A stretch of 63,260 bases of DNA, counting the filler, from Octopus bimaculoides (taxonomy: Eukaryota): assembly GCF_001194135.2 (NCBI RefSeq). It is 6 parts of 4 records of this genome, joined end to end, with 100 filler letters (N's around TTAATTAATTAA, not from the genome) between each part and the next. Parts side by side here need not be neighbours in the genome. Positions count along the whole stretch, not along the records: positions 49,160 to 57,403 come from NC_068982.1; 5 more parts are not named here. The stretch is one strand, 5' to 3'. The notes under the pieces were generated by a model. It did no database searches. It saw nothing but the letters and a program-made list of their open reading frames with translations, and was not told where the DNA came from. Of this stretch, positions 8,831 to 57,685 are shown one piece after another; position 1 is the first letter of the stretch, and the number at the start of each line of letters is the position of its first letter. Made by a program: the position numbers and the translations under genes.

Positions 8831-9334
8831 TTCATCCAGTTATTACATTCTGAATGTTCTGCTGGATAAAGAGTTGAAGGGTCAAAGCAATGTCTTTGGT
8901 TACTCGTGACTATGTAGTCGCCTAAGATAATTAGCGAAAGCACGGTACATGCTACGAAGTAATACTCACTCACGAGTAGTTTTTATGCGTGTGTTTTAGA
9001 AGCGCGTTATCTAAATCGAAGAACTCAACAGTTCCAACATACATACAGTATTCCTTCTATAACGATAAAAATATATTTAATCGTTATGTTACGGAGTTGT
9101 TACATTAAGATGCTCCGAGTAAGTTGATATGTTTTCGTCCTGTAAAAATAACTGCATATATAGAAATACAATATTCTAATTATTCTAATCTTCAGTCGTT
9201 GGATTACGGCATGCTGTGGCCCCCGCCTTGAAGTGTTCTTATTCTATCGGTTTCTTTCCTATCGAACCGCTTTTATTACAAACCATATGTGTGTTTGTGT
9301 CAAGGACCATGACACAAACACACGTATACTCACG

Positions 9335-17444: not shown

Positions 17445-18359
17445 CTGTATATTATGCTTGAGTATACCTACACCAGATCTTACGATTTCTAACAAAAAGC
17501 ATTCGTTGACAAAACAGTATACAAAGGAGGAAGTAAAGTTGTTCAAGTATATTTCCTTCCTATCTTCATCGCCCTTCCCCACTCTCTTCTTCGCTTTTGC
17601 TCTATGAATTTATTTGTGTATTCCATGTCTGTTCCCCCACCTTGTAATGATAAAAAAATGTTTTGTTCTGTAAGCAATAGCTTGACATTTTTTAAAAAAC
17701 TTCCCTCGTAGTACTCAGTAAGTAACTAAGATAAGCCTTATCTTAAAATCCTTTATTGGAGGCAATCAGTGGACATAAGAATGAATAGAATGTGGATCAC
17801 GTTTGACAACCAAAAACAACTAATTTTACGCATCTCTGGAATTAATATAGCAAATCCGTATTTGCTGTTTTGGTCTCTCGGCAAAGATACTTTCAGTTTT
17901 TACCGCTTCTATGTGCAGTCAACAAGAAATCTATAGGTTCAGTCTGACTAACTGCAGTTTGGTGCCATTAAGAAGTTCAGTATGGTAAATAAAACTTTGA
18001 TAATCTAATCATATGCATATATATTATGAAGTGGCTTTTATATTAGCTTTGACGAAAAATTTTTCTGCCCCTGTGCAAGAGAAGTAAAGTGAAATGATCG
18101 TTTCTTCAATTTTTCATTCTAATGATACAGATGATAGAGAAAATGGATGTGTGCTGGTTCTTCATTTCTTGAAAGTTATCAGAGAACTGAGTGAAAGATT
18201 GGAACTTGGAATCAATCGATACCGTGTGGCAAAAGTGATTTCCTATAAAGCATTGAAGGCTCGAAGAGTATTGTCATTTCATAAACGTATTTTCCACAGA
18301 GATTTTTGAACTAAGAACCAAAAACTTGTCACGCACTCATTTCCGAGCATACCTCCGTG

Positions 18360-48892: not shown

Positions 48893-49224
48893 TATGTATG
48901 TATTATGTATGTATACGCACATACATACATATATAACGTTATACATATAATATATATTCTAGTGACTATACACGCAATTTTCCTTTCATGTGAAATACCA
49001 TTAACACCAGCGACGCAGTTGTTATCCGTAAAATACCGTTATGCGTTCAACGAAGTTTGNNNNNNNNNNNNNNNNNNNNNNNNNNNNNNNNNNNNNNNNN
49101 NNNTTAATTAATTAANNNNNNNNNNNNNNNNNNNNNNNNNNNNNNNNNNNNNNNNNNNNATACAGATATCTATACATATATACACCCATCACACACACAT
49201 ACACATGCACACAAACACACACAT

Positions 49225-49923
49225 TAGTCATGTGTTTTCTTATCCAAAACTCCGTCAAAAGTACTGAATGGATCTTTATGAAATTTGGAAATTATATTCT
49301 TTGCATAACGGCCATAACTCCCATGAAAATTCATATATTTTTGATGTTGATGAAATTTTAACCCGAACATAACAGATGAGCATTATTTAGAAAATGATGT
49401 CACACGTTATCGAGGCTACCATTCTTTCTGGACGTGCAAAAGGGGATGACGTCTTTATTCCAAGAATTCCTCTTACTCCATCAGGAGCAGACATTCCTTT
49501 TACTTTTAGAAGACTACAATTTCCTCTTCGTGTGACTTTTGCCATGCCCATAAACGAATCTCAGTGTCAAACACTGTCTGTAGCTGGTCTTCTCTTGGAA
49601 GAGCCCTGCTTCTCACATGGACAACTGTATGTTGGCTGCTCAAGAGTGGGCAGCAAAAAAAACCTATTCGTATATGCTCCACAAGGAACATTGTTTACAA
49701 CGAGGTGTTATAATCACAACAGCAAGAAAGTATGTACATGATCACCTTCTTTTACGAAACTTCATTGACTTTCGTATATTTATATTGATATACATATATA
49801 TACGTGTGTTTGGGTGCGTGTGTGTATATACATCTCTATATATAAAGATGATGCGTAGTCTAGACGGCGTTTTTAGATTTCATTATTCTCTTTAACCCGG
49901 GCAAGGCCGGGTATTTCTGCTAG
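49225..49923 (+). mobile_element. Helitron 3' portion (PIF1 helicase C-terminus + terminal hairpin/CTAG)
   Basis: VIEATILSG..VFIPRIPL..PFTFRRLQFPLR..FAM.IN.SQ.QTL..CFSHGQLYVGCSRV. ACCCGGGCAAGGCCGGGT hairpin followed by CTAG|T at 49920-49924. Confidence 0.9.
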
Positions 49924-50231
49924 TATATATATATATATACACATGCACACATACAATCAGTCATACACATATATGTGTGAATGTGTGTTTATGTGTGTAT
50001 ATGTGCGAGCGTGTATGCATATATGAATATATTATTTAAGAAACATTAAACTATCATTAATTCATTTTTAATATACTGACCATTCAAATGATGAAAACTA
50101 AAAATAATTTAAAAGTAAATGAACGAAATAATGTAATTATCATTATTATTTTTTTTAAAACAAAGTATTCCTACCATTAGTTACACTAATCAAGCAATTA
50201 AGCTCACCAAACAATTACATCCATCGAAAAA

Positions 50232-50539
50232 TTAACTGGCAGGACATCGGTACTTTTTGCTCAATTCGTCTAATTTCTTACCGGCAAAATTTGTATAAGT
50301 CCTGTAATATGTGTCTGATGGTAAGATTAACTGAATCTCATGTCTTTCATGAGGATTTATGAAACCGATGACCAAATAATCTTTGCCCTTTATCAACTTG
50401 GGACAGTGGCAACCATTTGCCAAGTAAATGAATTCTCTCGACATCAGTGGTAAAGTGTAGCGGTAAAGTTTTCTCACGGCGACGTCGTAGCGGACTTGAT
50501 TTTTCACTTTACTCACAGATCTCACACTTATATGACTCA
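50232..50539 (-). CDS. ADAMTSL5: Terminal coding exon, NTR (netrin C-terminal/C345C) domain, ADAMTS-like protein 5-like; upstream exons not visible (in gaps or beyond the window)
   Basis: Minus-strand acceptor (TTA)n-TTTCTTCTTTCAG| at 50540-50541 (phase 1), then open frame SHISVRSVSKVKNQVRYDVAVRKLYRYTLPLMSREFIYLANGCHCPKLIKGKDYLVIG...QLILPSDTYYRTY...RCPAS* to TAA. The CxCPxL..G..YLV.G motif is diagnostic of NTR. The RYxV..(V/L)Y....PL..RE(Y/F)...CxCP.L and QL.LP...Y.R pattern matches my recollection of the vertebrate ADAMTSL5 NTR. The domain call is strong; orthology needs BLAST. Confidence 0.8.
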
Positions 50540-50550
50540 CTGAAAGAAGA

Positions 50551-50620
<70 letters not shown>

Positions 50621-50622
<2 letters not shown>

Positions 50623-50809
50623 TCAGACAAATACATAACAAGTATATGTAGCATGCAGAAAATAGTACTACTAGACATCGCAAACATCCTACGTAAAACA
50701 CTTTCAATACAGTAACAATAAGAACACCACAACAAATCCCAGCACATATCCAAGGCACACAGAGTTGCGCTCCGTAGTGCAGTGAAAGCAAGTGATAAAA
50801 ATAAGGCTG

Positions 50810-50812
<3 letters not shown>
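50621..50812 (+). mobile_element. R4/Dong-like LINE extreme 3' end inserted in (AAT)n
   Basis: SMQKIVLLDIANILRKTLSIQ* plus a 3'UTR near-identical to 52198-52418; (AAT)n on both sides. Confidence 0.8.
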
Positions 50813-50875
<63 letters not shown>

Positions 50876-51405
50876 TTCACCATTCAAACTGACAGAAAGA
50901 TAGACGCAAATAGGCCATACATCATACTGAAAGACTTCAGACAAAAATCATGCCTCCTCATTGATATNNNNNNNNNNNNNNNNNNNNNNNNNNNNNNNNN
51001 NNNNNNNNNNNNNNNNNNNNNNNNNNNNNNNNNNNNNNNNNNNNNNNNNNNNNNNNNNNNNNNNNNNNNNNNNNNNNNNNNNNNNNNNNNNNNNNNNNNN
51101 NNNNNNNNNNNNNNNNNNNNNNNNNNNNNNNNNNNNNNNNNNNNNNNNNNNNNNNNNNNNNNNNNNNNNNNNNNNNNNNNNNNNNNNNNNNNNNNNNNNN
51201 NNNNNNNNNNNNNNNNNNNNNNNNNNNNNNNNNNNNNNNNNNNNNNNNNNNNNNNNNNNNNNNNNNNNNNNNNNNNNNNNNNNNNNNNNNNNNNNNNNNN
51301 NNNNNNNNNNNNNNNNNNNNNNNNNNNNNNNNNNNNNNNNNNNNNNNNNNNNNNNNNNNNNNNNNNNNNNACTTGTACAAATGCAAAACAAAAGTCAAAC
51401 ATAAA
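50876..51405 (+). mobile_element. R4/Dong-like LINE 3' fragment spanning a gap
   Basis: FTIQTDRKIDANRPYIILKDFRQKSCLLID starts immediately after (AAT)n. After the gap comes the subfamily-2 terminus ..AAAGTCAAACATAAA(AAT)n. Confidence 0.75.
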
Positions 51406-51439
51406 ATAATAATAATAATAATAATAATTCTTTCTACTG

Positions 51440-51681
51440 GAGGCACAAGGCCTCAAATTTTAGAGGAGGGTACTTGTCGATTACATCGACCCCAGCGTTT
51501 CACTGATACTTAATTTATAGACCGCGAAAAGATGAAAGGTAATGTCGACCTCGGCGGAATTTGAACTCAGAACGTAGTGACGGGCGAAATACCGCTAAGC
51601 ACTTCGTCTAGCGTGCTAACGAAATGCTTAGCGGTATTTCGCCTGTCGCTACGTTCTGAGATCAAATTCCACCGAGGTCGA
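51440..51681. mobile_element. SINE-A (minus) with its own 5' portion duplicated in inverted orientation
   Basis: Arms 51545-51606 and 51620-51681 are reverse complements (5 mismatches in 62 nt). Confidence 0.85.
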
Positions 51682-51689
51682 ATAATAAC

Positions 51690-51773
<84 letters not shown>

Positions 51774-52057
51774 TTTTTATTAACCACAAGGGTTTACATT
51801 CAGAAAAACATTATGGACAGCACAGGATAAAACAAAGAATGTATGTGTGTGTGTGTATGTGTGTGAGTAGTTGTGAGGGTTTTGTGCGTAGACAAGAGTA
51901 GCAAAATTAAAAAGAAATAGAAAAAGAAATCAACAACGTGTAATCGTCAGTAGGGAGGACACATTCAAGGCCTGCTCATGGAAAAGCCCCATAAAAAATG
52001 GCATAAAACCAAGTTTAGCACAAACAGATGGATAGGCATAAAACCAATTTAGTACAG

Positions 52058-52140
52058 CTCCAGAAAACAGTGTTATTAGAGACAGGATACTTAGGAGGGT
52101 TCTTGACATCTAGGGTTACTTATTGTCACCCGATGTTAGG
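52058..52140 (+). mobile_element. Short degraded RLE-LINE 3' remnant
   Basis: CTCCAGAAAACAGTGTTATTAGAGACA = LQKTVLLET.., the conserved RLE C-terminal motif. Confidence 0.45.
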
Positions 52141-52197
52141 AATTTTTTTTTCTTTTCCAACAGTCTAATCTGTTGTGCGTTTATGTATAATAATAAT

Positions 52198-52415
52198 GCC
52201 TTAGGTATAATAAAAAATATATTCAGACAAATACATAACAAAAACACCAGGACTTACAAATATATATAACATACAGAAAATTGCACTACTGGGCACTGCA
52301 CACATCCTACGCGAAATACTTTCATAAGAGCATCACAGCAAACCACAGCACATACCCAAGGCACACAGAACTGCGCTCGGTAGTGAAGTGAAAGCACGCT
52401 ATAAAAATAAAACTA

Positions 52416-52418
<3 letters not shown>
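52198..52418 (+). mobile_element. R4/Dong-like LINE 3' end inserted in (AAT)n
   Basis: YITKTPGLTNIYNIQKIALLGTAHILREILS* plus a 3'UTR ending AAACTACTG(AAT)n; preceded by (AAT)3. Confidence 0.85.
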
Positions 52419-52474
<56 letters not shown>

Positions 52475-53430
52475 NNNNNNNNNNNNNNNNNNNNNNNNNN
52501 NNNNNNNNNNNNNNNNNNNNNNNNNNNNNNNNNNNNNNNNNNNNNNNNNNNNNNNNNNNNNNNNNNNNNNNNNNNNNNNNNNNNNNNNNNNNNNNNNNNN
52601 NNNNNNNNNNNNNNNNNNNNNNNNNNNNNNNNNNNNNNNNNNNNNNNNNNNNNNNNNNNNNNNNNNNNNNNNNNNNNNNNNNNNNNNNNNNNNNNNNNNN
52701 NNNNNNNNNNNNNNNNNNNNNNNNNNNNNNNNNNNNNNNNNNNNNNNNNNNNNNNNNNNNNNNNNNNNNNNNNNNNNNNNNNNNNNNNNNNNNNNNNNNN
52801 NNNNNNNNNNNNNNNNNNNNNNNNNNNNNNNNNNNNNNNNNNNNNNNNNNNNNNNNNNNNNNNNNNNNNNNNNNNNNNNNNNNNNNNNNNNNNNNNNNNN
52901 NNNNNNNNNNNNNNNNNNNNNNNNNNNNNNNNNNNNNNNNNNNNNNNNNNNNNNNNNNNNNNNNNNNNNNNNNNNNNNNNNNNNNNNNNNNNNNNNNNNN
53001 NNNNNNNNNNNNNNNNNNNNNNNNNNNNNNNNNNNNNNNNNNNNNNNNNNNNNNNNNNNNNNNNNNNNNNNNNNNNNNNNNNNNNNNNNNNNNNNNNNNN
53101 NNNNNNNNNNNNNNNNNNNNNNNNNNNNNNNNNNNNNNNNNNNNNNNNNNNNNNNNNNNNNNNNNNNNNNNNNNNNNNNNNNNNNNNNNNNNNNNNNNNN
53201 NNNNNNNNNNNNNNNNNNNNNNNNNNNNNNNNNNNNNNNNNNNNNNNNNNNNNNNNNNNNNNNNNNNNNNNNNNNNNNNNNNNNNNNNNNNNNNNNNNNN
53301 NNNNNNNNNNNNNNNNNNNNNNNNNNNNNNNNNNNNNNNNNNNNNNNNNNNNNNNNNNNNNNNNNNNNNNNNNNNNNNNNNNNNNNNGTTCAAAAAATAA
53401 AACATCTAAAATCGCGCTCTTCGTTTTGAC

Positions 53431-53520
<90 letters not shown>

Positions 53521-53570
53521 TGATGATGATGATGACAACAACAACAACAACAACAACAATAATAATAATA

Positions 53571-54143
53571 GCAAGTGGATGTAAGAGCCTTTCACAAAAA
53601 GCATACAAGCGCCGCCACGATAGAATGTGTGTGTATCTTCATTGGTTATTATACCGTAAATACCAATATGAAATATCAGAGAACTGGTATTAGCGTGTAC
53701 CTAGTAAAGTTATGCAGAAGGATAGAAAAGTAACGATACTCTGGGACTATGATTTTCAGACGGATCATGAAATCAAACACCGTCGGCCGGATATAGTCAT
53801 ATTGATAAAAGAGACAAATACTGTCGGATCATTGATGTAGCCATACCAAATGACATAAATGATGTGAGTAAAGAGATTGAAAAAACCACCAAGTACTCCG
53901 AATTGAAAGTGAAAATGGCAAGACTGTATGGAATGCGAGAGGGTAATGTAAAAGTGAAAGCAGTGGTGATCGAAGCATTGGGCTCAATCCCATTGAAACT
54001 TCAAAACTTCTTAAGGCAACTGCACAAGGCAGCCTTATTGGACACAGAACACATCTTGAAGAAAGTATTATCTGAGGTCTTGTTGTGACTTGACAGATGA
54101 CTATAGACTCCGGTGCATTTTTACCTACACTGTGTTACGAAGG
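53571..54143 (+). mobile_element. R4/Dong-like LINE 3' fragment (RLE endonuclease + 3'UTR) with (AAT)n at both ends
   Basis: IASGCKSLSQKAYKRRHDRM..ILWDYDFQTDHEIKHRRPDIV..IDVAIP..EKTTKYSEL..ALGS..LHKAALLDTEHILKKVL: PD..D/E RLE signature. Ends ACGAAGG(AAT)4. Confidence 0.9.
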
Positions 54144-54156
54144 AATAATAATAATA

Positions 54157-54420
54157 CCAGGAATCCCCAAAATGGCAGAAATTCATGGGAACTGCCCATA
54201 TCCTACGTAAAATACTATTTACGTAATCTCAAAATTTAAAAGAAACTCAAAATTTTCTTATGTTTTCTTAAACATTCTCTAGAATAATACTATGTGCAAA
54301 ACCAAATATATGACACCCTAGGCATAACACCAACATGAACTTCTAACTGGTTGTCTCTAGAGGTCTCTGGGTGAGACTTGGAGCCAACTTGTACAAATAC
54401 AAAGCAAAAGTCAAACATAT
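54157..54420 (+). mobile_element. R4/Dong-like LINE 3' end, second subfamily
   Basis: PGIPKMA../MGTAHILRKILFT* remnant, then a 3'UTR ending ACTTGTACAAATACAAAGCAAAAGTCAAACAT(AAT). The same terminus recurs at 51371-51405. Confidence 0.75.
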
Positions 54421-54451
54421 AATAATAACAACAACAACAACAACAACAACA

Positions 54452-54482
<31 letters not shown>

Positions 54483-54489
54483 TGATGAT

Positions 54490-56790
54490 GATGATAAAGA
54501 GAAAACATAAATTATCACCAACAGAACTGCTTTCAACAAAAGAAACATTGCAAACAAAAGCTCAAATAATACGAAGATTTGAGAAGAAAAACAAATTTTA
54601 CAAGCAAAATAAACTGTTAAGATCCAATACGAAAACATTCTACAGAGAAATAGGGAGGGAGAAAATAACAGTTGAATACACCCCACCCGTAGAAGAAGTT
54701 GAAGACTTTTGGAAAAATATCTGGAGTGATGGACAGATTTACAATGAAAATGCAGACTGGATTAGACGCACAGAAGGATCCTACCAAAACTTACCAAAAC
54801 AAGCATGGTATGACATCACAATAGCATACCTAAGGAGGTCACTCACAAAGGCTCCTAAGTGGAAATCCCCTGGTAATGATAGGGTGCCAAATTTCTTGCT
54901 CACATCGCTCTCGTGCGTACACGAAAATTTATTTCAGTTAATCAATGAAATTATGAGAGATCCTACGGTAGCATCTGACTGGCTAGTAAGAGGTATTGCT
55001 TACATACACCCGAAGAATAATGAAACCAAATGTCGCCAAAGCTATCGGGCCATGGCATGTCTGTCTACCACGTATAAAGTTCTAACGTCCATCCTCGTGG
55101 AGAAAACATAGAAATTTATGGAACAGAACGATATTTTCTCCACTGAACATAAAGTGTGCCAACGAGACTCATATGGATGCAAAGACCAACTCTTAATCAA
55201 TCGCATGGTCCTTGAGAACTGTCATCACAAACGCAGAAATCTCAGTTCCACATGGCTCGATTATAAAAGGGCCTTTGACAGAATGTCGCATTCATGGATC
55301 TTGAAATCGCCGTTGATCTTCAAAATTTTTCTAGTGATTTTAAATTTCCTGAAGCACAACATGTCAGTGTGTAATACGAATCCCCAATTATACCACTGTA
55401 ATGGAAAACTGACCACAAAGAATATTAGTATCAACTGCGGCATTTTCCAGGGTGACTCACTTCCACCTTTAATTTTTTGCATAGTCCTAATATCACTTAC
55501 AAGTGAACTTAACACAACAGGGTGTGGGTATAAAATTGGCGACAAGAAAATAAGTCATTTATTTTATAAGGATGACTTAAAACTCTGTGGCAAAGACGAT
55601 AATGAGCTTGAAGGACTACTACGTACTGTGAAAGCATTCAGTGATGACATCGGGATGGAATTTAGTCTTGATAAATGTGCCAAGGCCAATTTCCAGAAAG
55701 GGAAATTGATGGCCTCACATTCAGTGGTGTTGGATGTTGACACAGTCATAAAAGAACTCGAGCAGGAACAAACTTACAAATACCTCGGAATAAATGAGGG
55801 CTCTGGCATTCAGCATGCAGACATGAAAGAGAAGATCGAGAAGGAGTGTTACAGGAGCGTTCGAGCAGTCCGGCAATATGAGTACAATACACGTAACAAG
55901 GTGTTAGCTATAGATTCCTTAGCAGTTCTGGTTGTTATTTACAGTTTCAATGTGTTGAACTGGAATATCAGCGAAATAAGACGATTGAAAGGAAAATCCG
56001 TAAGCTGCTGACTTGCAAAAGATGCACCACTGAAAGGCAGATGTAGATCGTCTTTACCTAACCAGAGCTCAAAAAGGTCGCGGCTTCATCCAATTTGAAA
56101 TCTCTTACAAAACCACTACAATTGGACTGGCAAAATATCTTGAAACATTTAACGACTGGATGTTAAAGATCGTTGAAAACTACAAGAGACGTAAGAAGCT
56201 TCATTTGTTATGAAGGAGAGCAAAAAATCTGCTAGTGAGTTTACGCATAACAGACAGGTTGAACAGCATGATGGAAGTAAGGCAACTGTAGTTGCAGATG
56301 TGAAATCAATAGCAAAGCAAAATGCGTTTGAACAATTAGCTGATAGGTGGGAAGAAAAACCGCTGCATTGCAAATATGTGGCCTGTAAGAAACGAGCTGA
56401 TATAGACCAGAAGTACACCCATCAGTGGCTACGGAGCTCAGGGCTAAGAGCAGACAGCGAAGGCTTTATTTTGGCTGCTCAAGATCAGAGCATATTGACC
56501 GGAACTATCAAGCCAATGTGATGAAAAATGGAGTAGACTCAAAGTGCAGATGCTACAACGATGGGATTGAAACAGTAGACAACCTAATCTCTGGGTGTAA
56601 GGTTTTAGAACCTCTAGATTACAAATCAAGATATGACAGAGTTGGCCAAAATCTACATTGGATAATGTGTCGGCATTATAAAATCAAAACCACTGACAAA
56701 TGAGGCTGTAATTGAGGGAAAAATTGTAACGATTCTTTGGGACTTTCCAGTATGTACATACTAGACCATCAAAGCAAGTATGGATGCTCA
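54490..56790 (+). mobile_element. R4/Dong-like non-LTR retrotransposon (RT + degenerate Zn knuckle + start of restriction-like endonuclease), 5'-truncated and decayed
   Basis: ORFs 54371-55111, 55118-56011, 56210-56521 and 56425-56703 give KSPGNDRVPN, IFQGDSLPPLIFC, HLFYKDDLKL (YxDD), KYLG, AAQDQ, CRCY..ETVDNLISGC and WDFP. Stops and frameshifts are present. Confidence 0.9.
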
Positions 56791-57685
56791 TACAGAAATA
56801 TCAAAAACCCAGCAAAATACGTAGAAAGCAAACATAGCAAATGATGTAAAATAAAAGTAGACATTTCACAATCTATAATTAAGTGAAAAATAAATGGAAT
56901 ATTGAAATAAATTAATTTAAATAATACCTGAGACAAACATTTTATTAAATCACAGAGAATATGTTGTTATAGATAGCGAAAAGGATCCTTGGGAGTTACA
57001 AAGTATCTACATGAAGACGAAATCACATTACCAGGAACTACGTAAAAATAAATGGCAAATCAAAGCAATGGAAAAGATGTGGAATAATTTTACTTGGCGG
57101 TCTATGGACTACTATGTAAACTGACACGAATGAGAAAGTTCAACACAGGTGCAGCAGTAACAAAATTGTGAGAAATGATAACAGCAGAAGAAAGTGATAG
57201 GATGGTGTAAAAAAATAAAAACTAGAAGAAAAAAAAAAATGATAAAAACCGGTGGGTGAAATATTTAGCAAGTACACATAAGATACTCTTACACTGAAAG
57301 ATGATATGTGTAAAAAACAAATACAAACATAGCTACAAACATGTGTGTGTATGTGTGTGTGTGCGTCTTTGCGTTTGTGTATTTGTAAATATATATATAT
57401 ATANNNNNNNNNNNNNNNNNNNNNNNNNNNNNNNNNNNNNNNNNNNNTTAATTAATTAANNNNNNNNNNNNNNNNNNNNNNNNNNNNNNNNNNNNNNNNN
57501 NNNATATATATGCGTATGTGTGTGTGTGTGTGTAATCTTTTGGATCAATGAGTATATGTCAATTAGGGTGCTGGGTAAAGCACATTAAGTGTTTGGGCTA
57601 CCTGGTGTTACCCACAGTTGGGATACATTTCCCCTGGATCTAAGTCAGGAATTCCGCAGTGTTAGTTGAGATAATAATTGATGAA

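What the first reader, a model, noticed from the sequence alone, without database searches (positions are those of the whole stretch)
50553..56790. Self-renewing (AAT)n landing pad: stack of at least seven same-strand R4/Dong-like RLE retrotransposons from several subfamilies
Seen: RLE-LINE pieces at 50621, 50876, 52058, 52198, 53571, 54157 and 54490 are all on the + strand. Five (50621, 50876, 52198, 53571, 54157) start abruptly after an (AAT)n tract and end in a 3'UTR plus (AAT)n. The 54490 piece follows an AAT-derived compound tract and lacks a tail. At least three different 3'UTRs occur (..ACTACTG/GCTGCTG, ..AGTCAAACAT, ..ACGAAGG). Established: Dong (R4 clade, restriction-like endonuclease) from Bombyx targets TAA repeats, and TPRT produces 5' truncation. 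Inference: each insertion leaves an (AAT)n tail that is the target for the next, so several site-specific families build a unidirectional array and keep extending the microsatellite. This could be a generator of octopus AAT repeats and of intron growth. I do not know whether it has been described in cephalopods.
Basis: partly seen in the sequence, partly recalled or inferred. Interest (0 to 1): 0.72.

Follow-up and report, generated by a model that had tools for sequence, protein, structure and literature searches.

The report
Stacked Dong-like retrotransposons in AAT repeats
This is a real pile-up of dead, truncated copies of Dong-type jumping genes, a family already known to insert only into (TAA)n/(AAT)n repeats and already catalogued in octopus genomes, so it is a textbook-quality example rather than a new mechanism.

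Summary
Seven + strand fragments of LINEs that carry a restriction-like endonuclease (RLE) lie at the stated places. Six end in a 3'UTR plus (AAT)n. Five begin directly after (AAT)n. No fragment lies on the minus strand. I add an eighth 3' end (53388-53430) and a non-LINE hairpin element (51429-51680) that also sits between AAT tracts. The copies belong to at least five lineages and all are dead.

Full-length relatives (about 1240 aa) have RT, a CCHC knuckle and a PD..D..ExK endonuclease, and no AP endonuclease. Their nearest solved structures are R2 proteins. In 53 related loci the first tract after the ORF is sense (AAT)n in 29 and (ATT)n in 4. Truncated copies abut (AAT)n at the 5' side. 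Mb-scale contigs from other organisms hold same-strand stacks of four to six elements.

This is the published behaviour of Dong (R4 clade): (TAA)n-specific in insects, molluscs, cnidarians and an ostracod. Dong-R4 is already annotated as abundant in octopus.

That it generates octopus AAT repeats genome-wide or drives intron growth is untested. Clade membership rests on architecture and target, not on a phylogeny. Assembly chimeras through the AAT hub cannot be excluded for this gapped piece.

The parts
50551..50622 (+). (AAT)24, leftmost landing tract. It abuts the polypyrimidine tract and AG acceptor of a minus-strand exon.
   Evidence: TRF, 24 copies, 100% matches; sequence
50623..50812 (+). 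A1: 190-nt 5'-truncated copy of lineage A (last ~20 codons plus 3'UTR ending ..GGCTGCTG)
   Evidence: Weak profile hit at hmm 1216-1237; 76-83% identical to A2
50813..50874 (+). (AAT)20.7: tail of A1 and landing tract of B1
   Evidence: TRF
50875..51400 (+). B1: lineage B copy truncated at about residue 1121. It spans assembly gap 50968-51370. The left part is RLE coding sequence, the right part the last 30 nt of the 3'UTR.
   Evidence: hmm 1121-1152, iE 2e-8; 3' end 28/30 identical to B2; expected missing length ~422 nt against 403 N
51401..51428 (+). (AAT)9.7: tail of B1
   Evidence: TRF
51429..51680 (+). S: non-LINE insert between two AAT tracts. Its 3' half is a 63-nt-arm hairpin. SINE-like by eye only.
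   Evidence: Inverted repeat I1, 92% complementary; RNA fold -135.6 kcal/mol, z -13.8; no tRNA; no LINE homology
51681..51770 (+). (AAT)20 followed by (ATG)10
   Evidence: TRF
51771..52057 (.). X: unassigned 287 nt (T9, a TG-rich microsatellite, a short internal duplication). Possibly native intron DNA that separates two pads.
   Evidence: No profile or tblastn hit; TG-rich similarity to the outer flanks
52058..52198 (+). C: 131-nt 3' end of a third lineage (LQKTVLL..ILRRVLDI* with one frameshift, plus UTR) and its (AAT)3 tail
   Evidence: Translation; blastn to the ORF ends of L028 and L026
52199..52418 (+). A2: second lineage A copy, truncated 22 nt further 5' than A1. It differs from A1 by 18-nt and 12-nt indels.
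   Evidence: hmm 1202-1236, iE 5e-8; alignment
52419..52474 (+). (AAT)>=18.7: tail of A2, runs into gap 52475-53387
   Evidence: TRF
53388..53570 (+). D: 43 nt of a further, unidentified 3' end (..CTTCGTTTTGAC), then a 140-nt compound (TAA)n/(GAT)n/(AAC)n tract
   Evidence: Sequence; TRF
53571..54157 (+). E: copy truncated at about residue 1060. It carries the whole RLE domain (RHD, PD, D, ExK), one frameshift and several stops, a 3'UTR ending ..TTACGAAGG, and an (AAT)4 tail.
   Evidence: hmm 1056-1236, iE 5e-28 and 2e-15; tblastn; translation
54158..54495 (+). B2: 263-nt 3' end of lineage B (..GTAHILRKILFT* plus a 194-nt UTR), then (ATA)3 and an (AAC)9(ACG)10(GAT)5 compound tract
   Evidence: Translation; blastn to A2 and to the L042 3'UTR; TRF
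54496..56790 (+). F: 2.3-kb copy covering about residues 352-1133 (RT, CCHC, start of RLE). At least four frameshifts and several stops. The 3' end, UTR and tail are missing.
   Evidence: Pfam RVT_1 E=1e-19; tblastn and profile; 53% identity to the best relative
50232..50539 (-). Context: probable terminal exon encoding an NTR module. The stack lies in the intron just upstream of it and is antisense to it.
   Evidence: Pfam NTR PF01759 E=7e-9; AG acceptor and stop codon read from the sequence

Best explanation
The region is a graveyard of at least seven, probably eight or more, independent, 5'-truncated and now dead insertions. They belong to at least five lineages of (AAT)n-specific LINEs of the Dong/R4 type, which carry a restriction-like endonuclease (RLE). 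One non-autonomous hairpin element lies among them.

Mechanism, inferred by analogy with R2 and from the junction anatomy:
1. The element's protein nicks the (ATT)n strand of an (AAT)n.(ATT)n tract.
2. The free 3' end primes reverse transcription on the (UAA)n-tailed element RNA. This is target-primed reverse transcription (TPRT). Base pairing between the tail and the tract probably helps.
3. Synthesis often stops early, which gives 5' truncation.

Because the nick is strand-specific, orientation is fixed by the polarity of the tract. Each insertion splits one tract into two and adds its own tail. The number of target tracts at the locus therefore rises with every hit, and later insertions of any (AAT)n-specific lineage pile up head to tail.

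Shown:
- The identity of the pieces, their shared strand, the tails and the junctions.
- The same anatomy in many unrelated loci.

Inferred:
- Which strand is nicked, and the role of tail pairing.
- The order of insertions.
- That every junction in this gapped assembly is real.
For: In the window:
- Seven fragments, all on +.
- Six 3' ends abut (AAT)n, and five 5' ends abut (AAT)n at five different truncation points.
- A1 and A2 differ in truncation point and by about 17-24%. E and F are only about half identical in DNA. The pieces are therefore separate insertions, not duplicates.

Family:
- RT.
- CCHC, RHN, PD, D and ExK motifs are invariant across 12 full-length relatives.
- zf-RVT is present and no AP endonuclease is found.
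- R2 proteins are the closest solved structures, E=4e-28.

Target, in independent loci:
- Of 53 relatives with a complete C-terminus, the first trinucleotide tract downstream is sense (AAT)n in 29 (median 91 nt after the ORF) and (ATT)n in 4. Binomial p=1e-5.
- By my reading, all eight full-length copies with at least 400 nt upstream have (AAT)n 5' of the element.
- Truncated copies abut (AAT)n at L023, L032, L059/61, L060, L074 and L076.

Stacks elsewhere:
- L001 has 3 elements. L005, L008, L013, L015 and L060 have 2 each. In those loci only one minus-strand hit turned up, 3.4 kb from the main element.
- Mb-scale contigs: L084 has 6 elements in 15.7 kb with different truncation points, L086 has 5, and L083 has 4 on + with (AAT)n plus 2 on - next to (ATT)34-35.

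Literature:
- Dong is (TAA)n-specific (PMC3812793, PMC7998251).
- The Bombyx Dong 5' junction is (TAA)n|GCTCCC.. (PMC3774820).
- Dong-R4 is abundant in octopus (PMC9115989, PMC13282606, PMC8967140, PMC10294476).
Against: - No named Dong or R4 sequence was available, so clade placement against HERO or NeSL is not shown by phylogeny.
- The N-terminal Myb/SANT-like domain reported for Dong was not detected by sequence or fold search.
- No HDV-like 5' ribozyme was found in relatives.
- F lacks its 3' end and tail, and C does not start at a tract. Deletions or other events have therefore also shaped the locus.
- The piece has two gaps, and every junction runs through a pure microsatellite shared by thousands of copies. 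That is where assemblers mis-join.
- No copies from the same genome could be retrieved. No within-species enrichment test or dating was possible.
Confidence: 0.85

Rival explanations
1. Assembly artefact. Some or all junctions are chimeric paths through the (AAT)n hub of the assembly graph. A fragment ending in a 3'UTR plus (AAT)n can only be joined to one starting with (AAT)n plus a body in the same polarity, so a mis-assembled path would also look like a same-strand stack.
For: There are two N gaps inside 6 kb, one starting inside an AAT tract. The tracts are 100% pure and 56-72 nt long. That is hard to span uniquely with short reads.
Against: Each of the three ungapped blocks already holds two or more same-strand elements. 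The compound, mutated tracts at 53431-53570 and 54427-54495 are unique sequence and are not hub-like. Identical stacks occur in Mb-scale contigs of other organisms.
Confidence: 0.1
2. Multi-template single events. Adjacent pairs separated by only (AAT)3-4 (C|A2 and E|B2) arose in one TPRT event. The reverse transcriptase jumped from the 5' end of one RNA to the (UAA)n tail of another, rather than the two arriving by successive insertions.
For: The spacers between C and A2 and between E and B2 are very short. Full-length tandem copies in L001 and L013 are separated by only (AAT)4-6. End-to-end template jumping by R2 reverse transcriptase is known (my own knowledge).
Against: Other neighbours are separated by 20-24 units. 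The partners belong to different, old lineages. Nothing distinguishes a template jump from a nick close to the 5' edge of a tail.
Confidence: 0.1
3. Local duplication. Unequal crossing-over or replication slippage between AAT tracts amplified a smaller original cluster.
For: Lineages A and B each occur twice. AAT tracts are good substrates for unequal exchange.
Against: A1 and A2 have different 5' truncation points and are only about 76-83% identical, with indels. B1 starts at residue 1121 and B2 at about 1222. The order of neighbours differs: A1-B1 against A2-gap-D-E-B2.
Confidence: 0.04
4. Not site-specific. These are ordinary LINEs that merely carry an (AAT)n tail, like the Drosophila I factor. 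They accumulated here by chance or because antisense intronic insertions are tolerated.
For: The I factor ends in TAA repeats without being (TAA)n-specific (PMC3747384). The whole stack is antisense to the NTR exon.
Against: The 5' flanks of full-length and truncated relatives in unrelated contigs are (AAT)n in the same polarity. The elements have an RLE, not an AP endonuclease.
Confidence: 0.02

Closest known systems
Dong (Bombyx mori), DongAg (Anopheles), DongBg (Biomphalaria glabrata, a mollusc), Dong1/2 (Darwinula): (TAA)n-specific members of the R4 clade
   Same: One ORF with RT plus a C-terminal restriction-like endonuclease. Insertion into (TAA)n with (TAA)n on both sides. Frequent 5' truncation. 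Annotated as 'Dong-R4' in octopus repeat libraries (PMC3812793, PMC7998251, PMC9115989, PMC13282606).
   Different: No tree against a named Dong was made here. The diverged Myb/SANT domain and the 5' HDV-like ribozyme reported for Dong were not recovered in the relatives. The papers I could read state the target specificity but do not describe multi-lineage stacks.
R2 (28S rDNA-specific RLE LINE; solved structures 9nl3, 9dou, 8gh6)
   Same: Closest solved structures (E=4e-28 over RT through CCHC). The TPRT mechanism assumed here was worked out on R2.
   Different: R2 has N-terminal zinc fingers plus Myb and targets one site in 28S rDNA. Its insertion destroys the target rather than renewing it.
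R4 (Ascaris), Kibi, Koshi and microsatellite-specific HERO families
   Same: RLE LINEs that target repeats: 28S rDNA, (TC)n and (TTC)n (PMC3812793, PMC4640811).
   Different: The target sequence differs. HERO is mostly non-specific. Among the relatives fetched here some carry (ATT)n, (TA)n, (AATA)n, (TTATT)n or poly(A) tails. Target switching of that kind therefore occurs inside this group too.
Drosophila I factor
   Same: The 3' end is made of TAA repeats (PMC3747384).
   Different: It has an AP endonuclease, not an RLE, and it is not (TAA)n-specific.
Head-to-tail arrays of telomere-specific LINEs (HeT-A/TART in Drosophila, SART/TRAS in Bombyx). Cited from my own knowledge.
   Same: Same-orientation arrays built because each insertion lands in, or recreates, the repeat that the next one uses.
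   Different: Those elements are of the AP-endonuclease type or are end-primed. They sit at chromosome ends, not in interstitial microsatellites.

Membership tests
RLE-type (R2 group) non-LTR retrotransposon | Reverse transcriptase domain of the LINE type | tested here: met
   Pfam RVT_1 E=1e-19 in F. All 12 full-length relatives match RVT_1.
RLE-type (R2 group) non-LTR retrotransposon | C-terminal CCHC knuckle followed by a PD-(D/E)XK restriction-like endonuclease | tested here: met
   C1050, C1053, H1062, C1067, R1078-H1079, P1135-D1136, D1151 and E1166-K1167 are invariant or nearly so in 12 relatives. E carries RRHD..RRPDIV..IIDVA..KEIEK, and F carries CRCY..ISGC..RYDRV. All 12 match zf-RVT.
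RLE-type (R2 group) non-LTR retrotransposon | No N-terminal AP endonuclease | tested here: met
   No Exo_endo_phos hit in any of the 12 full-length relatives. This cannot be tested on the window copies, which all lack the N-terminus.
RLE-type (R2 group) non-LTR retrotransposon | Sequence homology to R2 proteins | tested here: met
   9nl3_A E=4e-28 and 9dou_A E=8e-28 over residues 469-1084.
Dong / R4 clade | Insertion into (TAA)n, with the repeat in the same polarity at both junctions | tested here: met
   Window junctions. Downstream tract counts of 29 sense against 4 opposite. Upstream tracts and truncated copies that abut (AAT)n. Orientation follows tract polarity in L083.
Dong / R4 clade | Groups with named Dong/R4 in an RT phylogeny, apart from R2, NeSL, CRE and HERO | not testable with these tools
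   No named Dong/R4/HERO sequences are in the accessible collections. Xiong & Eickbush 1993 and Kojima & Fujiwara 2004 are not held. The NJ tree only relates unnamed relatives to each other.
Dong / R4 clade | Diverged N-terminal Myb/SANT-like domain without zinc fingers (PMC7998251) | tested here: inconclusive
   A conserved N-terminal block with invariant W75 and W106 folds as a confident four-helix domain (pLDDT 92.7). It has no Pfam or PDB sequence match and no significant fold match (best is Sap1, TMq 0.57, E=3). No zinc-finger family is found N-terminal of the RT.
Dong / R4 clade | HDV-like self-cleaving ribozyme at the 5' end (PMC3774820) | tested here: inconclusive
   Rfam finds none at seven full-length 5' ends. 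RNAalifold on five 5' ends gives an invariant 7-bp helix around a variable hairpin, with too little covariation to decide. This does not apply to the window copies, which are all 5'-truncated.
I-clade LINE with a (TAA)n tail (I factor) | AP endonuclease, no target specificity | tested here: not met
   No AP endonuclease. The 5' flanks are (AAT)n.

The most novel reading that the evidence does not exclude
Dong-type LINEs, together with non-autonomous riders such as the hairpin element S, are the main source of long (AAT)n tracts in octopus. Multi-lineage 'landing pads' grow by positive feedback, because each hit adds a target. They would then act as safe harbours that let many Dong lineages coexist for a long time, and they would measurably lengthen introns. 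The stacks found in Mb-scale contigs of other animals would make this a general mode of microsatellite and intron growth, not a local oddity.
Probability: 0.25. Interest if true: 0.5.

Novelty: new member of a known kind. Interest (0 to 1): 0.27.

Why it matters
This is a clean, annotated example of how a microsatellite-specific LINE turns its own tail into the next target. It explains why AAT tracts and Dong fragments travel together in cephalopod assemblies.

Practical consequences:
- (AAT)n tracts next to Dong 3'UTRs are poor microsatellite markers.
- These junctions are places where assemblies break or mis-join.
- Repeat annotation of octopus introns should expect same-strand Dong stacks whose orientation is set by the polarity of the tract.

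It does not reveal a new mechanism. The target specificity has been published since 1993-2004, and the family is already catalogued in octopus.

Tried and rejected
- **Copies from the same genome.** A protein search with the NTR exon and one with the E translation found nothing. The search with F found only relatives of 53% identity or less from other organisms. Within-species enrichment and dating were therefore not possible, and the organism stays unverified.
- **Named Dong/R4 references for a tree.** The two founding papers are not held. No accessible collection names such sequences.
- **HDV-like ribozyme.** Rfam at E<=0.1 on seven full-length 5' ends gave only noise. A pairing scheme I drew by eye for L013 and L001 was ambiguous and I dropped it. 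RNAalifold was uninformative.
- **Myb/SANT domain.** The profile against PDB and Pfam gave nothing. The AlphaFold model is confident but has no significant Foldseek match.
- **Identity of S.** No tRNA. Only sub-threshold miRNA-hairpin hits in Rfam, which I treat as hairpin artefacts. A full-text search for three S sub-strings found no paper.
- **Is X (51771-52057) a decayed part of element C?** No profile or tblastn signal, so it is left unassigned.
- **Does F continue beyond about 56790?** No homology and only short ORFs.
- **Literature on stacks.** I searched for an explicit description of Dong stacks or self-renewing pads. I found only the target specificity and occasional tandem insertion of other RLE LINEs (Utopia, PMC4640811).

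Full report
**What is in the sequence**

The piece 49160-57403 holds a run of A-rich trinucleotide tracts, all in the same polarity on the + strand (TRF):
- (AAT)24 at 50551-50622
- (AAT)20.7 at 50813-50874
- (AAT)9.7 at 51401-51428
- (AAT)20 followed by (ATG)10 at 51681-51770
- (AAT)18.7 at 52419-52474, running into a gap
- a 140-nt compound tract at 53431-53570
- an AAC/ACG/GAT compound tract at 54427-54495

Short (AAT)3-4 tracts lie at 52189-52198, 54146-54157 and 54421-54430. No (ATT)n tract occurs in the array.

**The pieces between the tracts**

I searched with full-length relatives by tblastn and with a profile HMM built from 12 of them, run on all six frames. Positions are in residues of the 1237-aa reference P0001.

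| Piece | Window | Reference residues | Note |
|---|---|---|---|
| A1 | 50623-50812 | ~1206-1237 | weak, iE 0.011 |
| B1a | 50876-50967 | 1121-1152 | |
| A2 | 52199-52418 | 1202-1236 | |
| E | 53571-54145 | 1056-1236 | |
| F | 54496-~56790 | 352-1133 | |

- Every hit is on the + strand and none is on the minus strand.
- C (52058-52188) and B2 (54158-54420) are too short for those searches.
  - They carry the family's C-terminal motif: LQKTVLL..ILRRVLDI* in C and GTAHILRKILFT* in B2.
  - By blastn they match the ORF ends or 3'UTRs of relatives.
- F has a Pfam RVT_1 match (E=1e-19). It then carries a CCHC knuckle and the start of the endonuclease domain.
- E carries the whole endonuclease domain, with RRHD, RRPDIV, IIDVA and KEIEK.
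- Both are riddled with stops and frameshifts.

**Junctions**

- Six of the seven 3' ends (A1, B1, C, A2, E, B2) run from a 3'UTR straight into (AAT)>=3.
- Five 5' ends (A1, B1, A2, E, B2) start directly after an AAT tract, at five different points of the element.
- F starts after the compound tract. It is cut at about residue 1133 with no UTR or tail. The sequence to its right has no homology to the family.
- C is preceded by 287 nt (51771-52057) with no LINE signal. The array may therefore be two neighbouring pads.

- D: 43 nt of a further 3' end (53388-53430), followed by (TAA)n.
- S: a 252-nt non-LINE element (51429-51680) between two AAT tracts. Its 3' half is a hairpin with 63-nt arms (fold z -13.8).

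**The gaps**

Gap 1 (50968-51370):
- The left side is endonuclease coding sequence.
- The right side is the last 30 nt of a 3'UTR that matches the end of B2 in 28 of 30 positions.
- From the relatives and from B2's 194-nt UTR, about 422 nt should be missing. The N run is 403.
- One lineage B copy spanning the gap therefore fits but is not proven. Reading frame does not matter because the right side is UTR.

Gap 2 (52475-53387):
- The left side is the tail of A2. The right side is the end of a different element (D).
- The two sides are not continuous parts of one element. At least one more body is hidden.

**How many lineages**

- A1 and A2 are 76-83% identical, with 18-nt and 12-nt indels. Their truncation points differ by 22 nt.
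- B1 and B2 share the 3' end but start at residues 1121 and about 1222.
- E and F are only about half identical in DNA where they overlap.
- The C-terminal peptides and 3'UTR ends of A, B, C and E all differ.
- That gives at least five lineages. The copies are independent insertions, not local duplicates.

**What the family is**

- A search with the conceptual translation of F found 621 proteins at E<=1e-10. The best is 53% identical. Many are full length, at about 1200-1260 aa.
- In an alignment of 12 of them the CCHC knuckle, an RHN motif and PD..D..ExK are invariant or nearly so.
- All 12 match RVT_1 and zf-RVT. None has an AP endonuclease.
- The closest solved structures are R2 retrotransposon proteins (9nl3_A, E=4e-28).
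- The elements are therefore LINEs of the restriction-like-endonuclease (RLE) group.

**Is (AAT)n the target, or only the tail?**

I fetched 80 related loci from metagenome contigs and six from ENA assemblies.

- Downstream tracts:
  - 53 relatives have a complete C-terminus and at least 60 nt downstream.
  - The first trinucleotide tract is sense (AAT)>=4 in 29, at a median of 91 nt after the ORF.
  - It is (ATT)n in 4 (binomial p=1e-5).
  - No such tract lies in the available sequence in 20. Many of those contigs stop early.
- Three of the four (ATT)n cases fall in one sub-clade of a rough NJ tree.
- On the 5' side, by my reading, all eight full-length copies with at least 400 nt upstream have (AAT)n in front of the element.
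- 5'-truncated copies abut (AAT)n directly in L023, L032, L059/61, L060, L074 and L076.
- A LINE that merely carried an AAT tail would have random 5' flanks. These do not.

**Stacks elsewhere**

- Same-strand tandem elements separated by (AAT)n occur in L001 (three elements) and in L005, L008, L013, L015 and L060 (two each).
  - Across the loci fetched up to that point there was a single minus-strand hit, 3.4 kb from the main element.
- Mb-scale contigs:
  - L084 holds six elements in 15.7 kb, with different truncation points.
  - L086 holds five.
  - L083 holds four on the + strand next to (AAT)n and, further along, two on the minus strand next to (ATT)34-35.
- Orientation therefore follows the polarity of the tract. 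Stacking is a general property of this group and is not peculiar to this window.
- This also argues that the stack here is not just an assembly artefact.
  - For this gapped piece, however, a chimeric path through the AAT hub would give the same same-strand picture. It cannot be excluded without reads.

**Comparison with what is known**

- TAA microsatellites are the published target of Dong in Bombyx, Anopheles and the snail Biomphalaria (PMC3812793, citing Xiong & Eickbush 1993 and Kojima & Fujiwara 2004).
- The Bombyx Dong 5' junction used for ribozyme assays is (TAA)7|GCTCCC.. (PMC3774820).
- Dong-R4 in cephalopods:
  - It is a standard class in cephalopod repeat annotation (PMC8967140, PMC10294476).
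  - A full-length Dong consensus exists for O. bimaculoides (PMC9115989).
  - O. vulgaris has five recently active Dong-R4 families with 1129 insertions (PMC13282606).
- Among the RLE clades, R4 is target-specific, and some HERO families also target microsatellites (PMC4640811).

Membership in R4/Dong:
- The architecture and the target criteria are met.
- The phylogenetic criterion could not be tested.
- Two further reported features were not recovered in the relatives: the diverged N-terminal Myb/SANT domain and the 5' HDV-like ribozyme.
- I therefore call the elements Dong/R4-like with about 0.8 confidence. The mechanism does not depend on the name.

**Mechanism**

Shown: strand-coupled insertion into (AAT)n, a tail of the same repeat, 5' truncation, and repeated hits by several lineages.

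Inferred by analogy with R2:
- The RLE nicks the (ATT)n strand. The nick primes reverse transcription on the (UAA)n-tailed RNA, probably helped by pairing between tail and target.
- Each insertion leaves an upstream remainder of the tract and a downstream tract made of the tail plus the remainder. One target becomes two.
- The short (AAT)3-6 spacers in front of A2 and B2, and in front of the full-length copies in L001 and L013, suggest that nicks often fall near the 5' edge of a tail. A template jump from one RNA to the next in a single event would leave the same picture.
- The mutated compound tracts around E, B2 and F, and the loss of F's 3' end, suggest that the right part of the array is the older one.

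**Context**

- On the minus strand, 50539-50232 is an open frame encoding an NTR module (Pfam E=7e-9).
  - It has an AG acceptor and a polypyrimidine tract that merge into the first AAT tract. On the gene strand that tract reads (AUU)24.
  - The stack therefore lies in the intron just upstream of a probable last exon and is antisense to it.
- A Helitron helicase fragment lies at 49400-49700 (Helraiser 7lcc_A, E=1e-21).

**Verdict**

It is the known behaviour of a known family that is already annotated in octopus.

What may be under-described is how regularly multi-lineage, polarity-locked stacks form. I found no paper that describes this explicitly. It follows directly from the known target specificity. 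The claims about genome-wide generation of AAT repeats and about intron growth remain open.

Noticed in passing
window 51429-51680 (+): A non-LINE element sits between two (AAT)n tracts. A unique 116-nt 5' part is followed by a near-perfect hairpin (arms 51545-51607 and 51619-51681, 92% complementary; RNA fold -135.6 kcal/mol, z -13.8). It has no tRNA and no Rfam family above threshold. From memory, the 5' two-thirds resembles the abundant octopus SINE. A 3' stem-loop next to an (AAT)n tail could mimic a Dong 3'UTR, so this may be a Dong-mobilised rider.
   Followed up: partly
L086:18955-19155 (also 9036-9130 and 18040-18112): In an unrelated Mb-scale contig, another element that recurs after AAT tracts is present once as a perfect palindrome. 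The palindrome even includes part of the AAT tract (..AATAATAAGACCAC...GTGGTCTTATTAAT..). Snap-back or inverted-duplication structures inside AAT-tract stacks therefore occur in two unrelated genomes. I have no explanation.
   Followed up: partly
L008:84-167; L017:10-85; L019:25-100: Some Dong-like relatives begin, directly after the microsatellite, with a tRNA-like module. L008 passes Rfam tRNA (30.3 bits, cut-off 29) and ARAGORN calls tRNA-Gly. L017 and L019 show A-box and B-box-like motifs by eye only. This could be a 5'-end processing signal (RNase P/Z) in place of the HDV-like ribozyme reported for Dong, or a SINE-like addition.
   Followed up: partly
L034, L038, L040 (also L039, L030, L009, L028, L007, L032): Three relatives that cluster in an NJ tree carry (ATT)n, the opposite polarity, after the ORF. 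L038 also has (ATT)n upstream. Others end in (TA)n, (AT)n, (AATA)n, (TTATT)n or poly(A). Tail and target switching therefore occurs inside this group.
   Followed up: partly
window 50232-50539 (-): A probable terminal exon encodes an NTR (UNC-6/C345C) module (Pfam E=7e-9). Its AG acceptor and polypyrimidine tract merge into the first tract, which reads (AUU)24 on the gene strand. The word-index protein search found no homologue.
   Followed up: partly
window 49400-49700 (+): A fragment of a Helitron Rep/helicase C-terminus. It matches Helraiser 7lcc_A residues 1377-1459 (E=1e-21) and, more weakly, PIF1 helicases.
   Followed up: yes
window 56780-57403 and 51771-52057: F is cut at about residue 1133 with no UTR or tail, and the sequence to its right has no homology to the family. 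The 287 nt before C also has none, and it carries a TG-rich microsatellite like both outer flanks. Deletions have also shaped the locus, or these are remnants of native intron DNA.
   Followed up: partly
P0001 residues ~68-146 (relatives only, not in the window): A conserved N-terminal block (invariant W75 and W106) folds as a confident four-helix domain (pLDDT 92.7). It has no significant match in the PDB; the best is the Sap1 DNA-binding domain (TMq 0.57, E=3). It is a candidate for the module that reads (TAA)n.
   Followed up: partly
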